A stretch of 64,000 bases of DNA, from the NCBI RefSeq assembly GCF_031769215.1, contig NW_026783003.1, positions 62,001 through 126,000 of the forward strand, given 5' to 3'. Made by a program: the position numbers and the translations under genes. The notes under the pieces were generated by a model. That model made no database searches and was not told the origin of the DNA. It saw only the letters and a program-made list of their open reading frames with translations. Shown here one piece after another: positions 600 through 21,800 of the stretch; position 1 is the stretch's first letter, and each line of letters begins with the position of its first letter. The stretch comes from Ylistrum balloti. Its lineage: Eukaryota.

Positions 600-889
600 T
601 CAGACAGGAAGCTGCACACTGCCTAGCTTGACCGTTGACCTGCCACCAACAGAGACCGCCCGAACCACCACATATATACGAAGGCCAGAAAGGTTTGTGA
701 TGACTGGTGGAATGTTTAATGTCATAGATGTGGCTCTGGTCTCCATCCATTGGGCAATGTCACCACTACCAAAGTTGCTGCCAGCAGAGACTTCATAGAA
801 AAGCTCATGTGTTGATGTAAACACTGTGTCCCATCCTATTGTCAATTCCTGATTGGAAGAGTCCCAGCTCACATCCAGTGGGGTATCAG
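600..889 (-). CDS. Exon 53 (terminal)
   Basis: gacag|CT DTPLDVSW...VVVRAVSVGGRSTVKLGSVQLPV*; no hydrophobic anchor. Confidence 0.9.
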
Positions 890-3800
890 CTGTCAATAAA
901 ACAACACATTCATATTTAACTGTACATGTGAAACAATACACCAGACTTGAACATTGTATAAAAACATGAGCCATTACAATAATTGAATTTTAGCATGACA
1001 CCAAACACTACCACCAAACACTACCATTGTCATGACACCAAACACTACCATTGGCACGACACCACTTACTACCATTGGCACAACACCAAACACTACCATT
1101 GGCACGACACCAAACACTACCATTTCTGATAGTATTAATGTAACAAATGCAGAAGTCACAAGTGACTTCTTGTATATACAAGATTTGCCCCTGACAATGT
1201 TAAGTATGGTGAATAAAAGTCACAAACCTGTAGCTGTATTCATTAACTGATTTGACCAGCTGGGCCAGGATTGTTTGTTATAATGAAATAAAGATGGACC
1301 TACTTATTCTATTTTGCTTCCTGGCAATTTCTGATTTATGTCTTTAAGCATTTACATATCTAAAGCGCTGACAAACAATTATTCTACATAAATGAACATG
1401 CCCAGTTCATTGTGGGGTAAAATAATTATATTTTGTAGGCTACAATCTGTCACCCCAAGAGGTATACTCCATCATCAAATTTATTATTTGTAGGCAAAAG
1501 ATTACTTATGACCTAAAGCAGAGAGGCATAGAGACACTAGCAATGTACATGACAAGGAATGAGATCTGGCGATGGTTGTTTAACGTCTGCTTAGAGACAA
1601 GCTGTGGTTAGTGAAAAATATTTCAAATCTGAAAAAAATCATAAGATTTGTTGAGAAAGATCAGATTGATAAATTATGAGCGTTAATTTTGCCTTTAAGT
1701 TTCTTTTTTTTTCTGTGGCAACAATTTAAATTTTCACTCACCACTAGTTATTTATAACTAACCTTCGAAGACCCAAGGCTACTTTTAAGCAGACTGTCCT
1801 CCTCTATTTGAAGAAAACATCTTGCAACCCAACATTTTTTAAATGGTAAAGTATTCACGACAAAGTACTTAAGGCAACACATTAATGCCTTTCAGTGCTA
1901 ACACAGTTCTCTGCTGTAATACTGGCAAAAACTAAGAAGAGTTAAACGGTTACCATTTATGGTGGGAGGCTGTGTGAACACTGTAAGATAAGTGTGACTT
2001 TGGACTGATAAGAATTAAACGGTTAACATTAATGGTGGGAGGCTGTGTGAACACTGTAAGATAAGTGTGACTTTGGACTGATAAGAATTAAACGGTTACC
2101 ATTAATGGTGGGAGGCTGTGTGAACACTAAGATAAGTGTGACTTTGGACTGATAAGAATTAAACGGTTACCATTAATGGTGGGAGGCTGTGTGAACACTG
2201 TAAGATAAGTGTGACTTTGGACTGATAAGAATTAAACGGTTACCATTAATGGTGGGAGGCTGTGTGAACACTGTAAGATAAGTGTGACTTTGGACTGATA
2301 AGAATTAAACGGTTACCATTAATGGTGGGAGGCTGTGTGAACACTAAGATAAGTGTGACTTTGGACTGATAAGAGTTAAACGGTTACCATTTATGGTGGA
2401 AGGCTGTGTGAACACTGTAAGATAAGTGTGACTTTGGACTGATAAGAATGAAACGGTTACCATTAATGGTGGGAGGCTGTGTGAACACTGTAAGATAAGT
2501 GTGACTTTGGACTGATAAGAATTAAACGGTTACCATTAATGGTGGGAGGCTGTGTGAACACTGTAAGATAAGTGTGACTTTGGACTGATAAGAATTAAAC
2601 GGTTACCATTAATGGTGGGAGGCTGTGTGAACACTGTAAGGTAAGTGTGACTTTGGACTGAAAAGAATTAAACGGTTACCATTAATGGTGGGAGGCTGTG
2701 TGAACACTGTAAGATAAGTGTGACTTTGGACTGATAAGAATTAAACGGTTACCATTAATGGTGGGAGGCTGTGTGAACACTGTAAGGTAAGTGTGACTTT
2801 GGACTGAAAAGAATTAAACGGTTACCATTAATGGTGGGAGGCTGTGTGAACACTGTAAGATAAGTGTGACTTTGGACTGATAAGAATTAAACGGTTACCA
2901 TTAATGGTGGGAGGCTGTGTGAACACTGTAAGATTAGTGGTGACCTTGGGGCTAGTCTTGTACTGAAGGTTCACAGCGGAAACATCCATGTCGTGTTCAC
3001 CTTCCGACAGGCTCAGACCATGTATCCACACATAGGTCTCCACCTGGTCTGAAGCTAACATCTTCCTCTTTTCACCATCCAGTGTAAACTGTAAACAGAG
3101 GAATTAACATGGGAGACCTCTCCACCAGAAATCAAATCTTTGAATTATTAACAGCTGCTGAGGTATTCATATTTAGGCAGTCTTTCTGATAGTTGAAGAT
3201 AAAACTATTATTTATACAGCATATTCTAAGTTTGTTTTGATATCATATTGGACACCAGAATACTTCCTAATACTGTATAGATGGAGGCTAATATTTTATG
3301 TTTTTTTTTTAATTTGGGCTATTTCACAATGAGTAAATTTTGCACATGTCCATTAACTGATATCCTTGTATACAGGTTTAAAGCATAGATTTTCTTACAT
3401 TTTAATTTATGCTAAATATTTCCCGAGGATTTAATAACCACAAATACAGCAAAATTAATCTACTCACGAATATTAACAACTATGCAGTACATTTTTATAC
3501 TCTTGTTAAAAACCATTCAGGTAAATAGCTTTGTGCTGCTTCTGTTTATGCATATATTGTTTAACATCAGAGCAGCATATCCTTCATTATCCCAAAATCT
3601 GACCCTAGATAAGTGTATTCCTTACTGTAAAGCCCTCAATGCCGATATGGTCTACAAAGCCTGACCACTTCAGACGAACTTGTGTGGTGTCGCCCTGATA
3701 GTGTGGGGCTGCTGCAAATTCCTCCTGTGACAGTCCAATTGTGCTGAACTGAACATTGTCCACTGCTGGACTGAGTCGAGAGATACGGACACCATCTGAT

Positions 3801-6800
3801 GACTTGACAGACTGAACACCAGCTTTGTTCTGACAGCGGATTGTTGAGTAGACAGTCATGCCCTGGACAGAGTCATAGCCAACATCTTGGACCTGTCCAG
3901 TAAACACATTATCAGGCATCCTCATGAAAGTTTGCAGTTCATTGCCGAATGGCTGGTACCCTGGAAAAATGTGATGTTGTTGTTAGCTATATATAAGCAG
4001 GAAAAAAAATCAGATGTGACCATTAACTACAAACAATTTCCATGACATTATGTCAAAAGCTTTCCTCTACATTACATTAATTAATGAATAAAGAATTATG
4101 CTGAATATATCTATCTCTTTGAAACAGCTAATAAGTTAAAGTAGCCCTCTTATTCACAAGCAATATGATCTCTAAACTATTGTACTGTCATGTGAGTTTA
4201 CGGCATCATGAATTGTTACTTATAAAGCTAAATATTGAATTTTACAATCATGCCATGTTTATCTGATTATTCAAAATCTGTTAAAATTTTTCAAAGTTGT
4301 TACTTTATTCTTATCAGGGTTAAAACCACATCATAGATTGAAACAATACTCACCTATAGCCCATTCACAAAAGTCCAATCCTGACTCTGGATCATTGACT
4401 TCCCAGTTGACAAGCACTTCATCTTGTTCCCAGGAGTCTAGGTCCAACTCTGCACAAAGGGAGATATTTTATCTTATCTTATCAAATATACGAAGTTAAA
4501 TAAACTATATCCTCCATGTCAAATAGTTTTGATTTTTATAGAATATAATTTGGAAAGTACATTGTCTTATGTAACTAATTATGGTGTTAGGTATATTGTG
4601 GTTAATATCTACCAGGGTTATAAGATACCAATGTGAAAACTAATCAACCAATGTTTACTCCATCAGACTTAATCACAAATGTTTATTATTCATTCATAGC
4701 AGTGAATAGTGCAAGAAAATGAGAGAAAAATCCCCAAGCATGTCCAGTAAATTCCCATGTATAGCGATTCCTATTTGGATGCAGAATACCAAGTGGTATA
4801 TACCTGGTATATCTCGTTTAATATGGACTGATCATACTCAATATTTTTGACATCTTAAACTAGGTTTCCAAGCAATAGGTTCTTTGTTTTTAGGATAATA
4901 TCATGTTTTCCTTGGACGGTCTTAATAACTCTTGGTGCCGTCTTTCCTTATTATTACATTGTTTTCTGTAACTAATTTGATAAATCTATAAATATCACAC
5001 ACAGTGTTAAGTACTTACCTGTTGTTCCTGTGCCTGAAAAATAAATATAAATACTCAAGTTAATTTAATAATATGCATTTCATTTAAGTAAGTCTTAAAG
5101 AGACAAACAAGAAAACTAGGTCAGACTAATAACACTTTTATCAAATTTCAACTGGTCTTTATATGTTCTTTAAATGTTGGATATTTTCCCTCCTAATAAG
5201 AATAAGAACTAATCATAGGGAGGCAACATATATTCTTTGGAACAAAACTTTTCCGAAACTGTCACATTGTGAAAGAATAGCAAGGTGAAGGTCTATCATC
5301 AATGTGAAGATGTACATACCTGAGCCATCATTGACAGCAGTGATGACAGGTGCAGTGAGATCTACCAGGATTGGTGAGGAATACGCTATACCTTGTAGCC
5401 CTGAAGTACTGGTAGCCACCACAGTGATGTATACCTCAGATTTGTGAACAAGGGTCACAGTGTTGTTGTAGGCAAATCTCTGCTGCCCAACACTGCGGAA
5501 ATCCTGAACTTGTGTCCCTCCCTTTTTGTAACCTGAAGTAGTTAAAATAAAACAACAATATACTCATTTATGGTTTGTTTTTGGGTTCATCATCCCTTGA
5601 ACAGTCAGGGTCAACTTCTCTGTTGATTATCTTATAAAATGCATGGAAGGCCTGTAGTATGCCATCCAGAGCAAATTAGGGTATTGTGTCTATCCCTAAA
5701 CACAACCATGACAGCACAGACTGATCTGTTTTTCATATATATTATGTCACCTGTCAATACTTACCTATAGCCCACAGGTACTCTGTGATGTGACTCTCTG
5801 CCTCCACAAAACTCCAAGAGCCATGTATTGATCCCCATTCATGCAAAAACACCACATGCGCATTTACAGTGTCAGAGGTTGTGCTGTCAGTATGTGAAAC
5901 ATGATGTACCTGAATGTCGTCGATCAGTATTCCAGTACCCCTGTCCAAACTACCAAGTCTTAGAGTTGCTGAAGTACTGGACATGACAAAATAAAATGTG
6001 TGGTGATGCCAGGTGATGATCTCTCTTGTATCTGAGTGGTGGTCATCAAGACGGTAAGCCTTGGTGTACATGAGGAAGACATGTCGATCACCGAACTCCA
6101 CAAAGCCCTCCTTATTAGCGATGACTGAGTCCACGCTGGGAAGATGAGAGGTGACAAACGTGACCCTGTACAGGCCGTCTACCTCAAGTCCACTGATGTC
6201 CTGGGACAGTGCACCTCGAACTATCACCATGGACCTACCATCTCTTGCCAGGTTGGTGTCAGATGACACAACGGCAACACATGTGTCCCAGGTACTTGTC
6301 CATTGCTGTGGGAGGTGTGAGGAATTCACATTACATATATCCGTGTTGTTGACATTGTCCCAGGAAATGGAATGGCCGTTACTGTTTTCAAATGACGGGT
6401 TTGTTGCCAGATTTACAGTGTCATAGTGGACCAGCTGGGATGGAATTGGTGGGGTGGTGTCCACTGTGACCCCATCTGATACAGCTGTATCAGACTGTTG
6501 TCCCAGACCATCTACAGCATACACCTTATTGTATACTCTCATACCTGGAATTACAGAATAATTTTTCACTTTTTATAGGGTATCAGTAGTGACTGTAATT
6601 CACTGAAGCACATAATTTTAAAGAGGGATAAAATGGAACATTTCATCTTTTAGTTCTTAAAATCAAGATAGGATTCATATTATAACATACCACTATTAAG
6701 AAAAATTACAGCTACAGTTAACATCATGTAAAAACCATCACAAAATAGTATGAATTGTTTGATACGATGATGAAAATCATAACTTTGCATATATGGGCAC

Positions 6801-9800
6801 ATTTATCTATATAATATGAAATAAAATAACTTTGAAACTTTGAAATGCTGCATATTGTTAGATTTACCATGAGAGAGCGATGTTGTCAGGTTAGCTCTGA
6901 CAGCAGTGCGGAGACCTACAGCTTCCCACCGTTTCACTGAACACTCTGTCTTGCTTTGGGTGCTGCCCACACACCAGTAATACGTCTTCACTCCAGCGTC
7001 AAGGTCCACAAATCCATGCCACGTTGCCCCCAAAAGTGTGGTACTACTTTGGTACTCTAAGTCATGAATACCTGTATTACAAACATATCATACTTGATGT
7101 ATTGATAACAATAACCTCATAGACATTAACATATACAAAAGGCCAAACGTTATCTATTGTTTCAAGAATTTTTTTTCAGATTAATTAGGTTTGCACACCA
7201 GTAAAATATTCCAACATGAAATCTAGATTTCTTTATGAAACATGTCCTGTAACCTTCATGACATTAATAAGATAGGCAGAATATAATCACTTAATGTAAA
7301 TGTATTAGAAAAAGAATCAAAGACGATTCAGCATTGCATAATCTGTAAATCCACTCTCAGCTGTTAAATAATAACAAATAAAATTAACACTAAGTCCCAC
7401 AGAGATATTGGCAGCTACAATTGTTTGTTCTTAACTTGTCCTTTAAAAGTTGGATCTTTCCCTTCTCTAATCTGTTTTTGCTCTTAAATATATTAAATTT
7501 GAATATTCTTAAGAAATAGTCATAATCATCTTTTTAACTGCCAAATCCAAGACTATCTGTTATTTATATTGTTTCTCTGATCAGTCTAAAAATCCAAAAG
7601 GGCACACCTAGGGACCAAGGGGAACCTACAAATTAAATTTGAGGAAGATCCATCTAGCATTTCCTTAGAAATAGTGATAACTAACTTTTGTTTTCAAAAT
7701 TTGCGATGGTAGCCTGTCAATCATTTTATTTTCCTGTTCAATTTTAAAATCAAGTATGCTATGACTGGGAACCAATAGGAATTTAAATTGAGATTCAATT
7801 AACAGCCATCCATTACAACTGTACTTCTCTAGTAATGCCAATTTTTTATTGACAAAATAAATGATGGCTAGCTGTCAGTCATTTTAATTTTCTGACAAGT
7901 CCAAAAATCAAACTTGCGGTACAAGAGAACAACGGAAACCTACATATGAAATTTGAGGAAAAAGTTCACTTTGTATTTCTCAGGACATAGCAATAACAAA
8001 AACTGTTTAAGGCCCATCATCTGATGATGGCAAGAAATTGGCTGCAGAAATACAGTTGATGTATTACAAGGGTTCTTTTGTGATTCCAATGTCCACAGTA
8101 AATTTACTCAAACAGTTTATTAGTCAAAACAACAATTACAGAATTCCACATCACCAACATCATACACTTGTATGTGACATGAGTCATACATTTTTCACCA
8201 CAAGATATAGATGTTAATGGTCACACAGTACAAACCTCTCCTGGTACTGCATATAGGGCAGTGAAGTTCTGATCCTAAAACACAGTATCACAATATCATG
8301 CAGATACAGTCACATCTATCATTCTCCAAGAAGTTGTGACATCCAATTCAATTTGTAACTAACAACATCATCACTCCAAGCACCAAATCAAACAAAAATC
8401 ACCTTAAGTATATTTGGCAAAAATCTCCTCGCATTTTGTGATAGTGAATACCATACACAGAATAGGTGGCAGGGACAAAGGTTAATTGAAGTCTGTGAAG
8501 AAGAGGGGAATGTGATTATCTGAGGAAGGGAATTTCATGTAGAAGAAGTAGTGACCAACTGAACACCATAAAAGTGAAGAAAAGGAGAACTAAGGACAGG
8601 GATGGAAAGAGGGTATGAAGAATGGAGGAGAGTGTAGAAATAAACAAGCATACTGATATTGCTGAAGAAGTACATAGGTCAACTTTCAGCATCCCCAGGC
8701 TACAGCACTGTCAAAGATTTTCTAAAATAGTAACAATGACCTTGACAAAATAACCTGTAACTCAGGTCACAGTGTAACAACCTTGTCAAAGATCATTCGA
8801 TGTATTATAAGAGTGTGAAGTTTGATGAGAATCCCTAAAGGAAAGAAGCCACTGGAGCGCTGACAATGATTTTCTTAAAATAGTAACAGTGGCCTTGACC
8901 CAACAACCCTGAGATTCATGCCTGTTTATATATATGTTTATTTGAAGCTTTAAAAGATTGTGAAGTTTCATGAGGCTCTCTACTGGAATGAAGCTGCTAG
9001 AGTAGTGACAATGATTTTCTAGAGATTGTACCAGTGACCTTGACACAACGACCCTGAAATTCATACTTGTCCAAGATATTTTGATGCTGAATAACTTTCT
9101 ATGTGTGCAGTTTATAGAGAATCCTTCAAGGAGTGAAGCTGCTTGTCCCATCACCTACTGAGTATTAAAATACATAGGTTAGAAGAATATGAAAAGAATT
9201 AGAATTTGGATATCAAAGAAAGTGCACAAATTTAGATAAAAGGAAAATTATTTAAAGAATGAATGAAGGCAGTATTAAAAGATGGGGGAATATCCAACTA
9301 AGGAACAGAGACAGTGGAAAAGGATTTGTATCACAACAGCAGAGAATGATAAGGAAGGGATGAGGATGGACAAAATAAAATGTCTATTTCTACAGCTACA
9401 CTTACCTGTGCCATCATACACTTTACCCATGACTGGCACTACATTGTCAATCACAAAGCCGTCTGACGACTCTGTGTGGTGCAGACCCGAGAAGCTATAG
9501 GCCACTACGTTGCTGTAATATTTGATACGAGTGTCCAGATTGAAGCGTGTAAAGTTGTAATTAGTGGTGGTTCCAGGGTAACTGGCTGCTACTATGTAGA
9601 CGTCATCACCTGGCAACATATTCATCACAGAAGATTTTTATTAACACAAGATAAAAAGCTCAAGGTGTGTGAAGGTTTCCAGTTGGTTCCTAACAATGAC
9701 CTACATGGTAAAACAAAAAAAGACAATTCTTGATAATATCAATTTATAATACATAAACCCTGAAACATACATACCTCCAGGCATGGTGCTGAGATATAGA

Positions 9801-12800
9801 TTGAAGGTACGGATGTAGGAGGCTGCATTGAGAAACTTGTTTTTCCAGCTGACCATGAAGGGTTGGTACTCTAAAAAGTCCATGTCCTTGTGGTTGTGTT
9901 TGTGGTTTGATTCAGTCACCTGAAGTATTTATAATTGAAAACCATCAGTAAGTCTAATTTATCAGAGGCACAAACATTAAAATCTAGTAACACTTTTAAA
10001 CTAGAAATTCACCACTTTTCACTTGTTTTTCTCAAAAGAACATTTTTTGTATTCATTGCAAGCTATACATTGATGATACATCTTTAGAATAAGTCACCAA
10101 AACTTCATCTACTAATCAAATTATGTATCTCAGTTCCATTTTTAAGATTGTTGGAAAAAGATTTGTTCTACACATTTGTTGTTAAAAACATTTGACCGTT
10201 GAGATGTAGGAAACTTGCATTCATTGAATACCACGACAGAAAAGCACTGAACTAGAAACTGGTTGTACTAATTACAATATCTGTATGTTGTTATCATAAC
10301 ATTTACTGTGTAAATTCACCATTGTGTCAATTAAAAGATAGTTACACACTAAAATTCTATTACATCATGCTTTCCCTATAATTCATTTAAGGAAAAGGCC
10401 ACATACTGCACTTCCTCGTAGGTTGGTTGGAGTAGGCGGTGTTGTCATTATGGTTACACCAGAAGATTTGTAGATTGCATAGATATTGGAGGCATACCAA
10501 ACCCTGATGAAAAATGCATAGGATATGCCCTCTGATAGAATAGGTTTTTCTGAAGAAAAGAAAAGAATCATTGATGCAAGTGTGACATATATCCAGGGGT
10601 GTAGGAAATTCTGTTACATACAGGTAAATTCATAATTTGTTGCTGATCATGATCAAGAATTCATGAACATTACACTTAAAAAAATCTACAATCAAACTTG
10701 TTAATAAAGTTTTTTATGCTTGTGTTTTTATTGATTTAACTTGCTAGCTGATCATTCCCTCAGGATTTTAAACATTTTTAATACACTTGACCCAAGTGAC
10801 GACCTAAGGTCAAGGTCATTAATTATTCTGGCTTATCTCCACTAGATTGAACCCTAACCAGTCTTTGCATAACAAGTATGGCATTTGTTTTTGCTTTCTT
10901 GTTTGACAATTCTAATCAGTGTAAAGTGAAGAAGTCATTTAACCAGAACACTGAAGAGCTCATCATACGAACCCCGAGGAACCAGAAACAATTGCTGCAT
11001 ATTCTGTCCAGCATCATGCCAAATTCTCTCATCAGCCTGATGAAAAATCCCCTCAGGTGAGTCTAAGATCTCAAAGCAAACACTCCACTCAAACCTGTAA
11101 AGGAAGTGATTGTAACAGATAACATGCTTTATCAATTACCTGCTTTTTGGAATAAATATGACACATATATATGTGCACATTCTACCAAAGAAACATTGAA
11201 CAAATGAAATGTTTAAGAAAAAATGAAATATTTTATGTTTATAAATTTTTGCCAATGAAATATAGGTATGATGATAAAGCAGTCAATCCAAAATGGCGTA
11301 GTCTTGTTGTCAAGTACAACGTCAATCTATCTGAGGACAGGGAGCACACAAATATTTCCCGAACTCTTTTTAAAACCTCTATAGTTTATGTTTGGATCAG
11401 CCTTTCTTTTATATCGTTTTCCTTTAAAATGTGATTAAAAGAAAATTTAATATTTTTTTCCATTAAATATCATATATATTTCACTAGTATGACTATAGAA
11501 TATATCTACATTTTACATCCATGCAAAAATACAGATATTCTGTTATACATGTGAAATATATATGACATTAAATAGGAAACCATTATAAACCCTGTATTTA
11601 TCTCCCTTGAACAACACTTACAGGAAACTTGCGAATACGATGGACCTGTCAAGGACTTACCAGAGGGGTTGTAATCCACTAAAGTCTGATATTTCCCAGG
11701 AGGCACCAAGTCCCATATTTGTGGCAGTGAAACCTGTGATACTGTCGAAGTCTTTCACATCCAGGGGAGAGTTAGGATTATCTGTAACAGTCAGCAGTTG
11801 TAATAATAATAATAAAAAATGGTAGAAATTATTTATGATTAACAAATTCTGAATACAAAACCAAGAAAAAAACAGAAAATAAATCATGTGAATATTTTGT
11901 TTTGACTGTCGAACAAGAGCTTCAATCAATATTACTGTCAATCAATTCCTATAACTAACTTGAAAGTTTTCTACACTTTACAAAATATAAATATGTCATG
12001 TACATTACTTTTTCGCACAGAACAGTTTCCTTTTTTTCAATTTAGCAAAAATATCATTCATTTGAGTATGATTCATATAAAATCTATGAATCTGTGTAAT
12101 TTTTGTGTATTTTCATTGGTGAAAGAATTATTATTAAGGCCAGGATAATGGTCCAATAATGTTTTCAAATTTACCCTGTGAAGTGTAGTTGGTACATGGA
12201 TCCAAGTGACTGTAAGGACACACATTGTCCTGCGGAGCGCATACACAGTGACCCAAACATGAGTACGAGTCACAGCGACGGACCAACTCCAGAGCACCGC
12301 CAGATATCTTTCTAAACATCGAGTGAATGATAGAGCTTGACAAGCCTACCTGTAAATAGTAATTAAAAGTATGCAAGTTAGTACACAAATCGAAAATAAG
12401 TCTTCTCAAGAAATCATGATAACAAATTATAACTGTCAAAATCAAAGATGGCCATTTTGTTTTTCTGATCAGTACAGAAATTGACAGTGAACTTCTTTTC
12501 TATGGACATTACAACCTGAAGAAAGTGTGTCAAAAGAAGGTGGTGATGCATAAGTTGGAACCAATGGAAATCAACATATGGAATTTGAGGACAATTCATC
12601 CCTATGTCTTAAAAAACAGTGATTACAAGATTGTTCAAGGATGGACATTGGACCCTGATAGATGAAGGAGCAATTTGACAGCCCTATATATGATGAAAAT
12701 GGACTAATAAGCAATGTTACTTATATAGAATTGATGACAGAAGCCCTGCTGGAGGTCTATCAGTGTAATGTTACTTATATAGAATTGAGGATGGAAGCCC

Positions 12801-15800
12801 TGCTGGAGGTCTATCAGTGTAATGTTACTTATATAGAATTGAGGATGGAAGCCCTGCTGGAGGTCTATCAGTGTATTGTTACTTATATAGAATTGAGGAC
12901 GGAAGCCCTGCTGGAGGTCTGTCAGTGTAATGTTACTTATATTGAATTGAGGACGGAAGCCCTGCAGGAGATCTGTCAATGTAACATACTGTGTTTACTG
13001 CCCACATATGTATGAAAAGAGCATTGGAGGCCTTGCTGAGGTCCTGTGTGTCTATCTTGGCACTCTGTATGTGGCCTTCCTCCTGCACCTCACTTATGTT
13101 GCTGTGTGGCACCGATACAGGTATTCCTGTCACCTGTAAGGGGAAGAAAATATTAACATTAGCTAAAGCAGTATTACACTGTCACATCATCAATTTCTGA
13201 CAAATACATACTGATACATTTTTATTATCATATATGTTCATAGATTTATATTTCTGACAAATTGAGCCACCTTGGTAACTATAATCATTAATGTGTTGAC
13301 AACACGACATCTTTATTTGTATATTCAGGTGTAAGCTTCTAACCACTAACCCCTAGATCATAAGTTTGAGAAAAGCTGGCAGCAGGTAATGTCTGTTGGA
13401 TTACTTGTTTTCACACTGATGCTGAGTTTGTTTTCACTTTACAGGTTTTCCTCAAATAGTGCAGTAAAAGCTCTTCAGAGCTAGATACGCTCCTATGTTG
13501 AAGTTTATAACAAAAAAAAAACATATTTTTTCCTACTGACTTTGCTTGTTACCTTATTGAGATCACTAGCCATGTAGGTCTTGCCGACATTGACCAGGTA
13601 ATGCGACACTTCAGAGTGGAGATCAGCAAATCCAATCCAGGAAAGGTAAAGGGCACGACTGGTCCACGTCATAGAGTTAGGTACTTCCCGGTTTATATCC
13701 GAGGCATGATTTGTTTTGATGGAAAACATTCCTAAAACAAAATTTAAATATGAGGCTACTACTTGATGCACTAGTCCATTCACTTCAACGAGACACTTAA
13801 TTATTCCAAAAGCTGGTTCTATCCTTAGACTGTGACCTCTACATTTTATACCAATAAGCTATTCTCAAAAAAATGTAAAAAAGTTGACCAAAAAATTGAT
13901 TTTCTTTTTGTGATTTTTTTTTGTGAAACTTATACAAGAAAAATTATTTATATTAAAATATATTAGAATTATGAACTGCACACATTCCCCTCCAATTTTT
14001 TATCTAGGTAATGAGCTCAACCTAAACAAAATCTAAAAACCTTAACTTTTTAAAAAAGCCGGTCAAGGTCATCAGAATGAGAACATTCCTATATGACTAA
14101 AGCCAGTAACAATGTCTGTAAATACCTCTGGAGGGAGGAGAAGAGTCAACAAAGATGGCATCCGATTCTGTCTGGGAACATATTCCCGCCCCGTTACAGG
14201 CAATCAGGTTCACATAATAGTTGACCCCATCATGCAGATCAAGACCTGTGAAGGTGTAGTCTCGTACGATTCCATTGACCTTTAAAAAACAAGCTGATTT
14301 ATACCAAATGCCCAATATCTTCATGTCATCAGTATATTTTTTGTTCTAAAGACATAAAGAAAAGAAACAAATAACAGTAGATCTCTGGACAGTAGGTCAA
14401 TTAAAAATCATATCAACAACTGGAAATATTGATGTTTGTAATCTTTGTAGGATAATTTTGACTTTCCCTTAGAGATAATGGCTCTTTATATACAGGTACT
14501 TTCTTTCTCTATATGCCTTTATAGACAGGTGCTTACCTTTGTAGGAGAAAGCTGGAATTCTCCATTTTTATGGCCCTTTACAGACAAGTATTTACTTTTG
14601 AAGGAGAGAGCTTGAATTCTCCCTTTTTTTGTTGGTCTTTATAGGCAGGTACTAGCATTTGTAGGCAAGACCTGGAATTCTCTGTTTCTGTGGGTCTTTA
14701 TAGACAGGTACTTATCTTTATTGAGGGGAGGCAGAATTCTATGTTTCTGTACTAGCCTACAGTGGCAGTGTTATCCACTTTATTTACCTTTGTAGAGGAC
14801 AGCTGGAATTCTCCATTTCTGTGGGCCTTTATAGACAAGTGTTGTCTCTCGATAAGAGATTCAGCATCCTCTGCAGTCCATGTCACCTTAAATGAATCTC
14901 TCAGAAAAAGTTTCCCTGATATGAGCACACCAAGATCTTCAGACAGCGCAGGTTTGGTGATTACTGGGGCAGTATTATCTACTGTAAACCCATTTGAAAC
15001 CGTATCCACATATAAACCTAAAACAAATAAAAACTACATTAGTCCAAAAGACAGTCGGAGATATATTTGAATTGGCCTACAGACAGTCTGTGATGTATAT
15101 GTATTTGGACTGGCCTACAGACAGTCTGTGATGTATATGTATTTGGACTTGCCTACAGACAGTCTGTGATGTATATATATTTGGACTGGCCTACAGACAG
15201 TCTGTGGTGTATATGTATTTGGACTGGCCTACAGACAGCCTGTGGTGTTTATGTATTCGGACTGGCCTACAGACAGCCTGTGGTGTATATGTATTTGGAC
15301 TGGCCTACAGACAGCCTGTGATGTATATGTATTTGGACTGGCCTACAGACAGCCTGTGATGTATATGTATTTGGACTGGCCAATAGACAGCCTGTAATGT
15401 ATATGTATTTGGACTGGCCTACAGACAGCCTGTGGTGTTTATGTATTCGGACTGGCCTACAGACAGCCTGTGGTGTATATGTATTTGGACTGGCCTACAG
15501 ACAGTCTGTGATGTATATGTATTTGGACAGGCCTACAGACAGTCTGTGGTGTATATATATTTGGACTGGCATACAGACAGTCTGTGATATATATTTTTTG
15601 ACAGGCCTACAGACAGCCTGTGGTGTATATGTATTTGGACTGGCCAATAGACAGCCTGTAATGTATATGTATTTGGACTGGCCTACAGACAGTCTGTGGT
15701 GTATATATATTTGGACAGGCCTACAGGCAGTCTGTGATGTATATGTATTTGGACTGGCCAATAGACAGCTTGTGATGTATATGTATTTGAACTGGCCTAC

Positions 15801-18800
15801 AGACAGTCTGTGGTGTATATATACTTGGACTGGCATACAGACAGTCTGTGGTGTATATGTATTTTGACTGGCCTACAGACAGTCCGTGGTGTATATATAT
15901 TTGGACAGGGCTACAGACAGTCTGTGATGTATATGTATTTGGACTGGCCTACAGACAGTCTGTGGTGTATATATACTTGGACTGGCATACAGACAGTCTG
16001 TGGTGTATATGTATTTGGACTGGCCTACAGACAGTCCGTGGTGTATATATATTTGGACAGGGCTACAGACAGTCTGTGATGTATATGTATTTGGACTGGC
16101 CTACAGACAGTCTGTGGTGTATATATACTTGGACTGGCATACAGACAGTCTGTGGTGTATATGTATTTTGACTGGCCTATAGACAGCCTGTAATGTATAT
16201 GTATTTGGACTGGCCTACAGACAGCCTGTGGTGTTTATGTATTCGGACTGGCCTACAGACAGACTGTGGTGTATATGTATTTGGTCTGGCCTACAGACAG
16301 TCTGTGGTGTATATGTATTTGGACTGGCCTACAGACAGTCTGTGGTGTATATATATTTGGACAGGCCTACAGGCAGTCTGTGATGTATATGTATTTGGAC
16401 TGGACAATAGACAGCCTGTAATGTATATGTATTTGGACTGGCCTACAGACAGTCTGTGGTGTATATGTATTTGGACTGGCCTACAGACAGTCCGTAGTGT
16501 ATATATATTTGGACAGGGCTACAGACAGTCTGTGATGTATATATATTTGGACAGGGCTACAGACAGTCTGTGATGTATATGTATTTGGACTGGCCTACAG
16601 ACAGTCTGTGGTGTATATATATTTGGACTGGCCTAGACAGTCTGTGATGTATATGTATATTGACTGGCCTACAGACAGTCTGTGATGTATATGTATTTGG
16701 ACTGGTCTGCTGACAGTCTGTGGTGTATATATATTTGGACTGGCCTACAGACAGTCTGTGATGTATTAGGACTTGCCTACAGACAGCCTGTGATGTATAT
16801 GTATTTGAACTGGCCTACAGACAGTCTGTGGTGTAGTAGAAATGGTCTTACGAACCTGCTTTGTTGTAAGCCCTCACAGTAATGTAGATGGACTGGCCGA
16901 TAGGTAAGCTTGAAATAGCTGGATTGGTAGCAACCTCTGACAGGTGTAGAATTTCCTTAGCCAAAACATCATCGGTACCCCTATCTGTTCCTGCCCACCA
17001 TTCATAGTGGTCAAGTCCTGACTGCGGATCGGAAAACCCATACCACTTGGCTCCTATGTATGTCCTACAAATAGGATATAGTCTTGTGTCAGGACTCAAA
17101 ACAAATCGGCCTCATTGTTCACTTTAAAAAATTTGCATGAGTCACTCAAACAATTTGAAATAGTAATGTTCAAGACCTTTGACATGAAATCTAACTGATT
17201 CAAAAGGAATCAATGTAAACCAACTTGGTTTAGCAAATCATTCAATCAGGTAGTCATTTTCAAGTCACATAGGTGGAAATATATCTAAACTTCATACAAT
17301 ATTGACCTCTTCTATTGTAGAAACAGCAACTTAGACATTTATAGAACTTGTTTAAGCCCCATATCACACTTTTATGTTCAATAATATCATGAAGTAAATT
17401 AGCAGGAATATTTCACTTTCAAGAATAATTTTTAGGAAATTTGTAAGTAAAGAAGATATTTAGTGACTGACTGTGTTGCCTGGTAATGGATGTCTGAGGT
17501 TAAAGTCCCATCCTGAACCGCTCCAGCAGTTGGTGGACTATTGTCCAAAATGAGTCCATCAGAAGTAGCAGAGGAACACAGGTTGGCTGTATTACACGCT
17601 GTCACTGTTGTGTAGTAGGTCAAACCCACGCCAAGATGTTTCATTGACAACACAAACTCTGTGAAAAGGGATAACAATTTCCAGAATAAAAATCCTACAA
17701 CATACCCAGGAAAAAGCTCATGTTGGTTTGATAAAGGTAAGATTCCTAATTAGTATGATCATCGGTCTAACACAGGTAGGATCCCTAGGTAGTATGATCA
17801 CTGGAGAATGATACCATTAGGTATGCAGGGAGTCAATCAATAGTGATAATAAAATATTGTAGGTAGGAGTGTTTTCAACATTATCTAGCTTCACAATTAA
17901 AGTAGGGGAAACTCTTGTATCACATGCACACAGGTTTCACCAGTCATGACCCTAGCTGTGACTGGTGAAACTCGTCAGTATGATAGCTTGTGAAGTTGGT
18001 TAATAGTGAAAACACTCCTACCCAAGATGTTTCAACAATATGTAACTGTCAAATCTAAGATGGCCACCTGTGAGTCATTGTCTTTTTCCAATCAGGAATT
18101 TATTGAATTTCTATTGAAGCCTTCTACACAGATAGTGATAACAAGAATTCTTTAAAGATGGGAGAAAGGACAGAGAGACGAAGAGTGATTTGAATGAAAT
18201 AAAAATAAATTAAGGGTGATTAAAAAAAAATTACCTAATTTTAAGATTTTCACTTTGTGAAAAGCCAAGTAAATCTGAACATCAAAATGATGTTTATAGA
18301 CAACATGTTAATGTTTCATTGTCAGAATCCCTAGCTTTCAATACCTACCACTGGTGATACCAACGGCCTGTGTTTCCAGTACTTCCTGACAGCCGCGACA
18401 AGTACCGATGCTGACAGAAAACTCGCGAATGTTGGAATGTGCATCATGAAAACCTTCCCAGTATGCAGCAATGTAAGTTCTGTCTGTCTGAAAGTCTCTG
18501 TCCTTTTGATTGATGAGGTGGTCCTCAGGTTTGCCATCATACACGTGGCCTATGACAGGGGGAGTGAGGTCTACAGTTACAGCCCAGGACGAGGCAAGAG
18601 AGTAAAGTCCAGCTCCATTATACGCCTGGAAATGAAACACATCCATTGAGCCAGGGTATAATAATATAACAGAGGTCTTGATTAATTTCAATACCCCCAC
18701 TATTGAACCTTGGACCTCTGGCTTACTAATCTTACACTGGACTGATTAAGCTACAGTGGTTTTCTTTCTAATCAAGCTGTATATTACAGCTAGTATTTAC

Positions 18801-21800
18801 CAGGGTTATACATACTACCTCTACAGGAAGGAGTTTGTCCTTGAGTTTCTAGGGGTTACAAGGATGCCTGTGGGACAATGTTGATTCCTGAATCCCTATA
18901 CTTCAATCTCAAAAGAAGTAATATGTTGTGTGCAAGTTTTTAAGTATCAATTTTAGTAGATAGACCTTTACAATGCAATGGGTAGGATTCATCCTATTAC
19001 ATATAAAGTGTAGAGTGGAAATAATCAATAAAGGAATAAATGGTTATATCAAGAAAATGCTGCATAAGGTCCAAAGCAACAAAGTATGGAGTGTCAAATT
19101 TATCTCACTGGATTATCTCCCTTACACAGGGAAAGGGATTCATTCAGTTGTGTGGGTGTATGAAATTGTAAAGCTGTTTCTGAAGGTTTTCAAACAATTA
19201 ACTTTTTTTCCTTTATTTTTCAGTTAATTAGCAGTCATATGCTTATCCACAAAGCATTTCAATGCCATGAGAGAACACAATAATGTGACATTTTAGGCAT
19301 GACTTCTGCAGGGTGTCTTACTTACCTTGATTGTTATGTAGTATGCATGTCCTTCGTGAATGTCAAGGACAATATTACCATCCTGAACAGCACAGACAAC
19401 ATCTCCCACATCTGTATAAGACAGAATGTCGTCGTAGCCTGGCTCAGAACCTACAGCCCACATGTACCTCTGTATTCCACTTTCCAGGTCACTAAATACT
19501 TCCTTCCAGCTGTCAACAAACATTATCAATTTGCAAGCACCTTCTGTCAAACAGGTAAACATAATATAGTGACATGTCATACAGGTAGACATGATAGAGC
19601 GACATGTCATACAGGTAGACATGATAGAGCGACATGTCATACAGGTAGACATGATATAGCCACATGTCATACAGGTAGACATCAGACAACTGGTAAGTGC
19701 AATAGAGGTAATCACTATACAGGTACACGGCACAGGTCAATATCATACAGGTACACATCAGACAGGTAAATGACATACAGGTAAGGTCAATATCATACAA
19801 GTAAACATCACACAGAAAATAATCATTATGTAAAGTAGATGTACATCTTATGTTGAAGAGTCAATATGTTACCCACCAGGCCCCTACTCCTGTACGTGAA
19901 TTAAAGTGTCGATCAATCTTGATTGATTTGTCACTTTTAATGGGTGGAGTCACATCTATGATAACAGCATGACTCATCTGTGTGGTACTCCTCCCAGCAA
20001 AGTCCTTAGCTATAAAAACGCAGAGAATAATTGTTTAACCATCTTCATTGATTTACCAATGATACCTAGAAAACTTTATCATTATTTGTAAAATTAACTG
20101 ATAAAATAAAAGATAAAATGTTAAATGTTTGAAAAATGATTTCTCAGAAATAGTGTTCTATTTAATCACTCTTCATGGACTATTTTGTACACCTGTAGAA
20201 GTAAATAACAAGACAACAGGTAAGAGTGTTCCCAACATTAACCTGCTTCACAAAATAAGTAGGTCATATACTTTAATTACTTGCTATCCTAAAATAGGCA
20301 ACCTAAAACATATGTCCTTGAGTGTTTACCACAACATAATGAAATAGCAGTTGTAGGTGAACAATTCTAAAGACAACAATATCAAAATGTATATGGATAG
20401 ACTTATTCTGTCTTTTGTAATACAGAGTTATCTGCTCTGGTCAGCAAGTACTGATTATATATATATACAACAATTTTTGTGAGAGAATAATGTCATATTT
20501 GTGAGAAAATGATGCAAATTTCTCCCGCAAACAATGAATACCTGCTCACAAGGGTAGATAACTCTGCATCAGAAAAAGATGGAATCATTATGCTGAAGAT
20601 TCAAATGTTATCTCACCATAATGTTACTCTAAAAAATACTTACCTGTTACAGTAGCATAGTAGGTGTGGCCATTCTGGAGCTGCAGACCATGAAATGCAA
20701 CATGGTTACCTGCCCCTACATCAGTAAAGTCCACCATATCATTACCACCTGCCGTTGTTCCTGAAAAATAACATGTTATCAGTGACCCATAGTTGTTTTT
20801 TTCCTCTACATGAACTTTACCAGTTCTGTCATTCCTAGCCAGTCACTAATTTTCTGATAGTCGAGCATAAGATATCATCATATTACCTTTATGGTGCTAC
20901 AAAAGGTAGATATTGACTTGTGATAAGAATATACAATCAACCTTTAATTGTAATACATTTATAAAGACCTAATGTATCTAATACCTATGCTGACATTGTA
21001 GGCCTGGATGCCTGTGGAATGTGAGGTGGTGCTGAACTCCTCCACGTCTACAAATGTTTCCCAGTTCACATAAATATCTGTGAGGATGGTCTGCAAGTAA
21101 CAGATAAAGTAAGGAATTGATTCTAAAACTGAAAACTATTTGAAACAAACAATAAAATAACTCTTGATTTTGTACTTTACTCAGTAAATTCAAATACTGG
21201 AAGTATAAATGTATTTGGCAATGCTAACTTTAGGACCATGACAAGAAACTTTGAATTTGTTCTTGATTCAATGTTTGCTTAAAGATAGTATCACTCTTAA
21301 TGATTCTGGAGAGTCAGACTGATCAAACCAGAAAACAAAGACTACACAGGGTATTGACAAGTATTCATAAAATATTGACTCCAAGATGTAATCATGTTTT
21401 TTCTTTACAAGAATCTGAAGTTGTAAAATAAACTGCAGGATAGTTACTTGGTACAAACTGCCTGGAACATGTCCTATCCACACGTTACCAGGAATGGGTG
21501 GAGTCAAGTCCACAACTACACCATCACTGCACATGCTCACAGCCTCCAATGTTTGGGTCCATGTTTCCTGTTGTATGACAGTACTGCCTGCATGTAGACA
21601 CACGATGTAGCGAGCACCGTGCTGTAGCTCTCCATCACTAAACTCTGTGTTCATATACTCCTTATCTAAAATGTTAACGTATTTCACATTACTTGAGTTC
21701 CTCCAAGACCTTATATTTCTTAAGAGTACCATTTTCTGCTATTGTCTGGTACAACATACTAAATAACTGGCTCATGAGTAGTTGAAATGTATTGTAAATT

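What the first reader, a model, noticed from the sequence alone, without database searches (positions are those of the whole stretch)
5907..6413. DUF642/CBM4-9-like galactose-binding domain inserted intron-free in the gene's only very long exon
Seen: NLATNPSFE...W...A.DG...G.LSQ.I.GL...LY.V.F...T.RLG....G..IDDIQV lies inside a 780-nt exon; the next largest exon is 373 nt. It is placed right after a DTTPP linker between two FN3-like modules. Established: N-x-x-F-E ... S-Q ... Y-x-x-x-F ... I-D-D-V is typical of galactose-binding-like jelly rolls (CBM_4_9, DUF642), best known from bacteria and plant cell-wall proteins. Inference: late insertion (retrocopy or horizontal transfer) that gave the protein glycan binding.
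Basis: partly seen in the sequence, partly recalled or inferred. Interest (0 to 1): 0.7.

Follow-up and report, generated by a model that had tools for sequence, protein, structure and literature searches.

The report
Ancient DUF642-type lectin-like domain exon
A 780-base exon of a giant secreted scallop protein encodes a sugar-binding-type jelly-roll domain (DUF642 family), but it is not a recent insertion: the same domain sits at the same place in the same giant protein from a sponge to amphioxus.

Summary
On the minus strand, window 5765-6544 is one 780-nt exon bounded by phase-1 introns. It is about twice the size of the next largest exon (373 nt, 28105-28477). Window 5907-6413 lies just after a DTTPP linker between two FN3-like modules and encodes a ~170-aa domain.

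The family call holds too.
- AlphaFold2 gives pLDDT ~90 for the domain, a beta-sandwich nearest bacterial CBMs (VIA Z 13-14; Foldseek E 1e-7 to 1e-5). It is not Ig/FN3.
- The scallop sequence gets no Pfam hit, but a profile of it and four relatives reaches bona fide DUF642 proteins.
- Orthologous domains reach Pfam DUF642 (sponge 30.1 bits, cutoff 27).
- hhalign against DUF642 gives 99.6% probability.

"Late insertion" is not supported.
- The domain sits at the same position in colinear ~2,800-3,500-aa orthologues of bivalves, gastropods, a nemertean, an annelid, echinoderms, hemichordates, amphioxus and the sponge Corticium.
- The domain tree roughly follows animal phylogeny.
- The sponge also encodes it without an intron, in an exon of at least 477 codons.
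- A pattern scan (one conserved motif, tblastn-confirmed) of 185,579 prokaryote species found no close relative.

A much older transfer from bacteria cannot be excluded. Glycan binding is plausible but untested. This is a divergent metazoan member of a known family and is of moderate interest.

The parts
5765..6544 (-). The long exon: 780 nt, bounded by phase-1 introns on both sides. It encodes the end of one FN3-like module, the linker, the whole jelly-roll domain and the first strands of the next FN3-like module.
   Evidence: Splice sites were read from the sequence. The same acceptor and donor positions occur in L002, L003 and L004. Oyster, mussel and sponge proteins each align as a single tblastn segment.
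5907..6413 (-). DUF642-type (galactose-binding-domain-like) beta-sandwich domain, residues N53-V221 of the open frame. It has the N-P-S-F-E motif at the first strand, N-K-E-G-F-V in the middle and I-D-D-I-Q-V at the last strand.
   Evidence: The AF2 model has pLDDT ~90 over residues 50-225. Foldseek and VIA matches are to CBM61, CBM4, CBM16, CBM22 and CBM70. The profile reaches DUF642 proteins. hhalign gives 99.6%. The ESM Atlas points to DUF642 clusters.
6447..6461 (-). D-T-T-P-P linker motif at the end of the upstream FN3-like module. The same V-D-x-[TS]-x-P motif recurs at other module borders of the gene.
   Evidence: Translations; alignment A1 consensus VDTTPP.
6414..6544 (-). Last strands of the upstream FN3-like module (..VYNKVYAVD..SDGVTVD) plus the linker.
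   Evidence: Conserved in alignment A1. Orthologous giant proteins score as fn3 in Pfam over the whole protein.
5765..5906 (-). Spacer and first strands of the downstream FN3-like module (..H.V.LHEWGSIHGSWSF.E.ES.I.EY.WAIG). The exon ends in the Gly codon of WAIG.
   Evidence: Alignment A1; donor position.
6279..6335 (-). Span from Cys79 (6333-6335) to Cys97 (6279-6281). Each Cys is conserved in at least 90% of close relatives. The pair is a candidate disulfide of an extracellular domain.
   Evidence: Listed among the nearly invariant columns of alignment A1. The disulfide itself is inference.
5324..5533 (-). Next coding exon downstream, continuing the FN3-like module that begins in the long exon.
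   Evidence: tblastn with oyster P0045 residues 762-831, mussel P0090 2470-2540 and sponge P0210 3007-3076. Limits are approximate.
6863..7072 (-). Preceding coding exon upstream, part of an FN3-like module with the W.GF.D....Y.W..G motif.
   Evidence: tblastn with P0045 456-507 and P0090 2132-2203. Limits are approximate.
603..39164 (-). Host gene as far as I mapped it myself: a giant secreted protein made of FN3-like modules, colinear with ~2,800-3,400-aa orthologues. The last coding exon ends at the stop at 600-602.
   Evidence: Colinear tblastn segments of Sinanodonta P0090 (residues 15-2831) and Corticium P0210 (residues 222-3224); earlier finding s1-244119.

Best explanation
Window 5907-6413 (minus strand) encodes a divergent metazoan member of the DUF642 family. 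This is a galactose-binding-domain-like beta-sandwich of the same structural class as type-B carbohydrate-binding modules such as CBM4, CBM16, CBM22 and CBM61. The domain sits in the linker between two FN3-like modules, in the C-terminal quarter of a giant secreted protein.

It is an old, vertically inherited part of that protein. It was already at this position before sponges and bilaterians diverged. It has stayed in one long phase 1-1 exon in molluscs, and in an even longer exon in the sponge. Some echinoderm-like lineages have introns at its borders.

Shown here: the fold, the family link, the exon structure, the conserved position and the vertical descent.

Inferred (about 50%): the domain acts as a lectin-like module that ties the long FN3 array to a glycan of the extracellular matrix, mucus or a microbial surface. 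Binding would use the sheet face or loops of the sandwich. The conserved N-P-S-F-E and D-D motifs at the two end strands would play the structural role, often calcium-linked, that they play in related CBMs.

The ultimate source of the domain, whether eukaryotic inheritance or a very old transfer from bacteria, is unresolved.
For: Exon and splice sites.

Fold:
- AF2 gives pLDDT ~90 for residues 50-225.
- Foldseek PDB top hits are CBM70, CBM22, CBM61, CBM16 and CBM4 at E 2e-7 to 1e-5, probability 1.0.
- VIA search of 48,161 chains: 8hhv Z 14.0, CBM61 2xom Z 13.8, CBM4-2 4bj0 Z 13.5. Animal jelly rolls (MAM, Fbs, reelin, Eph) reach only Z 9.5-10.6.

Family:
- The domain-only profile A2 finds 125 representatives. 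Nine tail hits scanned (E 6e-9 to 4e-4) carry Pfam DUF642 at up to 221 bits, some with SLH, Pkinase or CBM_4_9.
- 32 of 47 short hits match DUF642 at E <= 1.
- Domains in the animal context reach 30.1 bits (sponge), 27.1 and 26.6 bits against the cutoff of 27.
- hhalign of 28 animal domains against 13 DUF642 domains gives probability 99.6%, E 1.2e-23, over 151 columns.
- ESM Atlas on the domain alone: 18 of 30 hits are DUF642 clusters at 0.90-0.92.

Age and descent:
- Named orthologues come from Sinanodonta, Mya, Crassostrea, Haliotis, Lottia, Patella, Pomacea, Elysia, Lineus, Owenia, Acanthaster, Amphiura, Saccoglossus, Ptychodera, Branchiostoma and Corticium.
- In the full-length (~2,800-3,500-aa) models the domain lies at roughly residues 2250-3110.
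- Sponge and mussel proteins are colinear with the window's exons.
- In the tree the animals form one clade (93/91), bilaterians are 98/88* with the sponge outside, hemichordates 99/96*, and molluscs plus nemertean 97/93*.
- The second scallop gene, on contig C8, has the same architecture and the same uninterrupted exon.
- The sponge genomic ORF P0175 is 99.6% identical to XP_062522967 residues 2637-3113, so the domain is intron-free there too.
- No close prokaryote relative was found in 185,579 species.
Against: - The scallop sequence itself gets no Pfam hit even at E <= 10. Membership therefore rests on profiles and on orthologues.
- A PDB sequence-profile search found nothing.
- No binding data exist, and plant DUF642 proteins are also reported to bind a protein (pectin methylesterase; abstract of PMC4264326), so the ligand could be a protein.
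- The non-bilaterian evidence rests on one named sponge species plus two unnamed relatives.
- Expression of the scallop exon could not be checked.
- The bacterial DUF642 set used for hhalign was chosen from the hits of the animal profile.
Confidence: 0.8

Rival explanations
1. Stem-metazoan horizontal transfer. A bacterial DUF642 or CBM-type domain, possibly together with bacterial-style Ig/FN3-like modules, entered the animal lineage before sponges and bilaterians split, and was inherited vertically afterwards. The missing introns would be a relic of that origin.
For: DUF642 and related CBMs are abundant in bacteria, and the closest structures are bacterial. Apart from fn3 itself, the best partial Pfam matches of the flanking modules are to phage or bacterial Ig-like families (Ig_J_second, Ig_Rha78A_N). 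FN3 plus CBM_4_9 architectures exist in bacteria. The domain is intron-free in both the sponge and molluscs.
Against: No bacterial sequence is close to the animal clade, and the bacterial set (P0153, of unknown taxon, falls elsewhere) forms one clade outside it. The prokaryote genome scan found nothing. The PDB is biased towards bacterial CBMs. According to the Atlas and the literature, DUF642 also occurs in plants, so an old eukaryotic origin is equally possible. Lack of introns in one exon is weak evidence.
Confidence: 0.15
2. One reading: a late, lineage-specific insertion (a retrocopy or recent horizontal transfer) into a pre-existing FN3-array gene of molluscs.
For: The domain is intron-free inside the only long exon, at a module border. 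The closest structures are bacterial.
Against: The same domain sits at the same position in colinear orthologues from a sponge to amphioxus. The tree tracks animal phylogeny. Both scallop paralogues have it. Identity to any DUF642 protein is too low for a recent transfer: 19% in the hhalign alignment. No prokaryote relative was confirmed by tblastn.
Confidence: 0.02
3. The identity and history are the same, but the domain does not bind glycans. It would be a protein-protein interaction or purely architectural module, comparable to MAM domains, or to plant DUF642 proteins binding pectin methylesterase.
For: MAM, Eph ligand-binding and reelin jelly rolls match at Z 9.5-10. [quoted passage not shown] Several conserved residues are specific to the animal clade: S-H, N-K-E-G, H-x-F, W-H-x-H-x-F-Y-F.
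Against: The best structural neighbours, by 3-4 Z units, are sugar-binding CBMs. The family and clan are mainly carbohydrate-binding.
Confidence: 0.3

Closest known systems
DUF642 (Pfam PF04862), of bacteria and of seed-plant cell-wall proteins such as BIIDXI and TEEBE
   Same: Profile-profile homology over the full domain (99.6%). Shared motifs: N-P/G-S-F-E at the first strand, G..Y.[VL].F, a central E-G-x-V, W....F.A, and D-[DN]-[IV] at the last strand. The fold class is the same. The sponge orthologue passes the Pfam threshold.
   Different: The scallop sequence is below Pfam detection. There is one domain embedded in a giant FN3-like array of an animal, rather than the two tandem domains of the ~370-aa plant proteins or the bacterial combinations with SLH, PEP-CTERM or kinase domains. 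It has an animal-specific Cys pair and His-rich conserved positions. The plant literature calls the family exclusive to spermatophytes (PMC6651502).
Type-B carbohydrate-binding modules CBM4/CBM_4_9 (PF02018), CBM16, CBM22 and CBM61
   Same: Best structural matches: Z 12.4-14.0, rmsd 2.0-3.2 A over 127-135 residues, and Foldseek probability 1.0. Eleven of 47 relatives give weak CBM_4_9 Pfam hits.
   Different: Sequence identity is only 12-24%. There is no Pfam CBM_4_9 hit for the scallop domain. Those modules are appended to bacterial glycoside hydrolases, not to animal FN3 arrays. Sugar binding is unproven here.
Animal jelly-roll modules: MAM domain, F-box sugar-binding domain (Fbs1/Fbs2), reelin subrepeats, Eph receptor ligand-binding domain
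   Same: The same general beta-sandwich, found in extracellular or glycan-recognising animal proteins (Z 9.5-10.6).
   Different: Clearly lower structural scores than the CBMs. The only sequence signal is a single MAM hit at E 0.07 in one relative.

Membership tests
DUF642 (PF04862) | The sequence matches the Pfam model at or above the gathering score (27 bits) | tested here: not met
   The window's exon and the domain alone give no Pfam family even at E <= 10 or E <= 1. Orthologous domains do reach it: sponge P0175 30.1 bits, P0161 27.1 bits, P0189 26.6 bits. P0227 carries a precomputed PF04862 hit.
DUF642 (PF04862) | Homology to bona fide DUF642 domains detectable by profile methods over the whole domain | tested here: met
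   hmmsearch with A2 reaches proteins with strong DUF642 hits at library-wide E 6e-9 to 4e-4. hhalign gives probability 99.6%, E 1.2e-23, 151 aligned columns. Caveat: the DUF642 set was drawn from those hits.
DUF642 (PF04862) | Galactose-binding-domain-like beta-sandwich fold | tested here: met
   The AF2 model has pLDDT ~90. Foldseek and VIA-align place it among GBD-like CBMs.
DUF642 (PF04862) | Motifs at the terminal strands: N-x-x-F-E at the start and D-[DN]-hydrophobic at the end | tested here: met
   N-P-S-F-E at residues 57-61 and I-D-D-I at residues 215-218 of the open frame. They align to the same motifs of DUF642 in hhalign.
Plant cell-wall DUF642 proteins in the strict sense | Two tandem DUF642 domains in a ~370-aa secreted plant protein that regulates pectin methylesterase | tested here: not met
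   There is a single domain per gene: only two matches in the whole scallop genome, one per paralogue. The host is an animal giant protein.
CBM_4_9 (PF02018) / CAZy CBM4, CBM9, CBM16, CBM22 | Match to the Pfam model | tested here: not met
   No hit for the scallop domain. Hits in 11 of 47 relatives are weak, best E 2.7e-4.
CBM_4_9 (PF02018) / CAZy CBM4, CBM9, CBM16, CBM22 | Demonstrated binding of a polysaccharide chain in a cleft on the concave sheet | not testable with these tools
   The domain has ~170 residues, and none of the top 50 Foldseek or VIA matches is titled as an FN3 or Ig domain.

The most novel reading that the evidence does not exclude
The host is an undescribed giant matrix or adhesion protein of animals, present from a sponge to amphioxus, with no vertebrate, arthropod or nematode among the hits that could be named. 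Its single DUF642 domain is a metazoan branch of a family that the plant literature regards as restricted to seed plants. The domain, and perhaps the bacterial-looking V-D-x-T-x-P Ig/FN3-like modules around it, would come from a bacterial surface protein taken up by the animal stem lineage.
Probability: 0.15. Interest if true: 0.6.

Novelty: new member of a known kind. Interest (0 to 1): 0.33.

Why it matters
It removes a tempting case of recent gene transfer into an animal: the intron-free jelly-roll exon is ancestral, not a late arrival. It also places a DUF642-type, probably lectin-like, domain in a giant secreted protein conserved across a sponge and many bilaterian phyla. All named members are annotated only as 'uncharacterized', 'hypothetical' or by a generic domain name, and the gene identifiers I searched appear in no paper of the held library. 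That gives a concrete handle, one recombinant ~170-aa domain, for asking what this conserved marine-invertebrate protein binds. It also offers a clean example for studying how introns were gained around an old domain exon.

Tried and rejected
- Pfam on the exon, on the domain alone and on eight neighbouring exons gave nothing usable.
- A PDB sequence-profile search gave only chance matches at E of about 0.5-1.
The taxa and intron maps of most short hits therefore could not be obtained. I fell back on cluster names and on BLAST of genomic ORFs against named proteins.
- The short fragment hits, examined as evidence for introns inside the domain, are mostly ambiguous. Many simply end at contig ends.
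- The asteroid-like ORFs P0099, P0102 and P0139 lose similarity about 36 residues into the domain behind a Ser/Thr-rich stretch. This may be an intron or an insertion, and I could not tell which.
- I first treated P0153 as a bacterial outgroup. It is a protein of unknown taxon with six N-x-x-F-E-delimited DUF642 repeats plus a partial one, and it landed on a long branch inside the mollusc clade. I regard that placement as an artefact.
- The metagenome scan gave only three loci.
- The prokaryote genome scan gave none. Its sensitivity is limited to relatives that share one conserved peptide pattern.
- No RNA run was found.
- The literature searches found no paper linking DUF642 to animals and none naming these genes.
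Colinearity was judged with public protein models of other species laid on the window exon by exon.
- The second structure job and the third word search were left unused.
Full report
**1. What is at the coordinates**

The gene lies on the minus strand. The stop-free frame 5757-6572 contains one exon, window 5765-6544, of exactly 780 nt. A polypyrimidine tract and AG precede base 6544, and GTAAGT follows base 5765. Both neighbouring introns split a Gly codon after its first base, so the exon is phase 1-1.

In order, the exon encodes:
- the last strands of an FN3-like module (..VYNKVYAVD..SDGVTVD);
- the linker D-T-T-P-P (6447-6461);
- about 170 residues running from N-L-A-T-N-P-S-F-E (starting at 6413) to I-D-D-I-Q-V (ending at 5907);
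- a short spacer and the first strands of the next module, ending in W-A-I-G.

So is the remark on exon sizes. The next largest exon I could delimit is 28105-28477, which is 373 nt. No other segment of orthologous proteins on the window exceeds 387 nt.

All comparisons were made exon by exon, or with public protein models of other species.

**2. Fold**

I aligned the exon with 31 relatives (A1) and modelled it with AlphaFold2. The model has pLDDT of about 90 for residues 50-225 and low confidence in the truncated FN3 flanks.

Foldseek against the PDB returned carbohydrate-binding modules at the top, at E 2e-7 to 1e-5 and probability 1.0. These were CBM70 (4d0q), CBM22, CBM61, CBM16 and CBM4, plus the C-terminal jelly rolls of Cry protoxins.

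An independent VIA-align search of 48,161 chains gave Z 14.0 (8hhv, C-terminal module), 13.8 (CBM61, 2xom) and 13.5 (CBM4-2, 4bj0). Animal jelly rolls such as MAM, Fbs1/2, reelin and Eph reached only Z 9.5-10.6. No match titled as an FN3 or Ig domain appeared in either top-50 list.

**3. Family**

The scallop sequence has no Pfam hit at all, and a PDB sequence-profile search found nothing.

I built a domain-only profile (A2) from the window, the scallop paralogue and three metagenome loci. I searched it against 1.84 billion cluster representatives. It found only 125 proteins at E <= 1e-3.

- The upper part of the list is animal proteins.
- Nine tail hits that I scanned (E 6e-9 to 4e-4) carry DUF642 in Pfam, at scores up to 221 bits. 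Some also have S-layer homology, protein kinase or CBM_4_9 domains; PEP-CTERM turned up among the short hits.
- In the reverse direction, Pfam's DUF642 model hits 32 of 47 short members of the list at E <= 1.
- It reaches or touches its 27-bit threshold in domains that have the animal FN3-like flanks: sponge ORF P0175 at 30.1 bits, P0161 at 27.1 bits and P0189 at 26.6 bits.
- hhalign of 28 animal domains against 13 DUF642 domains gave probability 99.6%, E 1.2e-23, over 151 columns. It aligned N-P-S-F-E, G..Y.[VL].F, E-G-x-V, W....F.A and D-[DN]-V.
- The language-model Atlas, given the domain alone, returned mainly DUF642 clusters of plants and bacteria at 0.90-0.92.

I conclude that this is a divergent DUF642-type domain of the galactose-binding-domain-like superfamily. 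The scallop sequence itself nevertheless fails the formal Pfam threshold.

**4. Age and mode of descent**

Cluster look-ups named the long hits. They come from:
- bivalves: Sinanodonta, Mya, Crassostrea;
- gastropods: Haliotis, Lottia, Patella, Pomacea, Elysia;
- a nemertean (Lineus) and an annelid (Owenia);
- echinoderms: Acanthaster, Amphiura;
- hemichordates: Saccoglossus, Ptychodera;
- cephalochordates (Branchiostoma);
- the homoscleromorph sponge Corticium candelabrum.

In the full-length (~2,800-3,500-aa) proteins the domain lies at roughly residues 2250-3110, always with the same FN3-like flanks.

The mussel protein (P0090) and the sponge protein (P0210) are colinear with the window's exons, from about 39 kb (sponge; about 33 kb for the mussel) down to about 0.6 kb (mussel; 3.6 kb for the sponge). 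Each crosses the long exon as one segment.

I made a maximum-likelihood tree of 34 domains with seven bacterial-type DUF642 domains as outgroup (P0153, of unknown taxon, was mis-set as an eighth; see section 9).
- The animals form one clade (93/91).
- The sponge, plus an unnamed relative, falls outside a starred bilaterian clade (98/88).
- Hemichordates (99/96), molluscs plus nemertean (97/93) and gastropods are recovered.
- Deuterostome relationships are unresolved.

The scallop genome holds exactly two copies of the domain. The second lies in a paralogous, more compact giant gene on contig C8 (274,180-304,331). That gene has the same architecture and the same uninterrupted exon with the same splice positions.

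A pattern scan (one conserved motif, confirmed by tblastn) of one genome from each of 185,579 prokaryote species found no relative.

'Late insertion' is therefore not supported. The domain was in place before sponges and bilaterians diverged, and it has descended vertically.

**5. Introns**

The acceptor and donor of the long exon are at identical positions and phase in the window, the scallop paralogue and two metagenome loci (L003, L004).

In the sponge, a single genomic ORF (P0175, 493 aa) is 99.6% identical to XP_062522967 residues 2637-3113. The domain and more of its flanks are thus encoded without an intron, in an exon of at least 477 codons.

Locus L005 groups weakly with a starfish in the tree. 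It keeps the same acceptor but has a phase-1 donor (GCAG|GT) directly after the last strand of the domain.

Two echinoderm-like ORFs (P0098, P0106) begin just before N-P-S-F-E and end just after the domain. This suggests a domain-sized exon in those lineages.

The simplest reading is that the long exon is ancestral and the border introns are later, lineage-specific gains.

**6. Function**

The following is inferred, not shown.
- The host protein ends without a recognisable membrane anchor: the last exon stops at 600-602 after an FN3-like module.
- It is therefore probably a secreted, filament-like array of FN3-like modules carrying one jelly roll.

By analogy with type-B CBMs and with what is reported for DUF642, the most likely role is binding of a glycan. 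Candidates are a glycan of matrix, mucus or a microbial surface. I give this about 50%.

A protein-binding or purely architectural role is the main alternative, at about 30%. Plant DUF642 proteins are also reported to bind pectin methylesterase (abstract of PMC4264326).

Positions conserved in the close (mainly mollusc) relatives of A1 that would be the first to mutate:
- the Cys79/Cys97 pair;
- S-H at 141-142;
- N-K-E-G at 152-155;
- H163, F165, Y168 and K170;
- W-H-x-H-x-F-Y-F at 187-194.

**7. Comparison with what is known**

In the held library DUF642 is discussed almost only for seed-plant cell walls. The plant literature calls it exclusive to spermatophytes (PMC6651502). Pfam hits show that it is common in bacteria.

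I found no paper that mentions it in animals, and none that names these genes. Some animal members already receive automatic PF04862 hits, so this is a new, divergent member of a known family rather than a new kind of domain.

**8. Verdict**

- Observation: confirmed.
- Fold and family interpretation: supported.
- 'Late insertion, retrocopy or horizontal transfer': not supported.
- A stem-metazoan transfer from bacteria remains possible at about 15% and is untestable with the data at hand.
- Interest: moderate. The HGT story falls away, but a conserved, uncharacterised giant protein of a sponge and many bilaterian phyla, carrying a testable lectin-like module, is a useful lead.

**9. Limits**

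- There was no RNA evidence for the scallop, and read laying was not used.
- The taxa of most short hits are unknown.
- The non-bilaterian evidence rests on one named sponge plus two unnamed relatives (P0227, P0234).
- P0153, which I first used as an outgroup, is of unknown origin, and its position in the tree is a long-branch artefact.

Noticed in passing
G000:C8:274180-304331 (loci L010, L006, L008, L002, L007): A second, paralogous giant gene of the same architecture in the scallop genome, on the plus strand. It is packed into about 30 kb, against at least 38 kb for the window's gene. It has its own DUF642-type exon at C8:300371-301144, 39% identical to the window's.
   Followed up: partly
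window 603-39164, module borders (e.g. 6447-6461, ~18560, ~17500, ~14130, ~29460): Many module junctions carry a V/I/L-D-x-[TS]-x-P motif. Examples are VDTTPP, VDLTPP, LDNSPP, VDSSPP, VDNTAP and IDVSPP. Apart from fn3 itself, the best partial Pfam matches of the modules in orthologues are to phage or bacterial Ig-like families (Ig_J_second PF24489, Ig_Rha78A_N). The modules are thus not classical animal fn3 domains.
   Followed up: partly
window 15270-16814 and 12662-13015: Intronic tandem repeats that produce long spurious open frames on both strands. One set shows repeated ...YIYITDCL... units and the other repeated ...NVTYIELR(M/T)EALLEVYQC... units.
   Followed up: no
protein P0153 (1012 aa, unknown source): A protein made of six DUF642 repeats delimited by N-x-x-F-E motifs, spaced about 157 residues, plus a partial one at the N-terminus. 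It has Pfam DUF642 at 102 bits. Its taxon is unknown and it sits on a long branch in the tree.
   Followed up: partly
proteins P0227 (3062 aa, 18.9-kb JGI contig) and P0234 (3079 aa, 21-kb JGI contig): Near full-length relatives of the sponge protein (57-59% and 29% identity in the domain region), each called as one uninterrupted ORF on a short contig. They are either assembled transcripts or intronless genes. P0234 has a very divergent domain at residues 2530-2653.
   Followed up: partly
proteins P0099, P0102, P0139 (asteroid-like genomic ORFs): Similarity to the Acanthaster orthologue starts only about 36 residues into the domain. It is preceded in the same open frame by a Ser/Thr-rich, mucin-like stretch. 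This is either an intron at that point or a lineage-specific insertion in the first loop.
   Followed up: partly
window 39030-39275 and 41840-42124 (minus strand): Cys-rich, EGF-like coding stretches upstream in the same gene (...CYPGKCSSETSDSCVCMQGFTGHHCDES......CSSCNDGFYANGGMCDS...). A further Cys-rich exon lies at about 12164-12352 and is conserved in the oyster, the mussel and the sponge.
   Followed up: no
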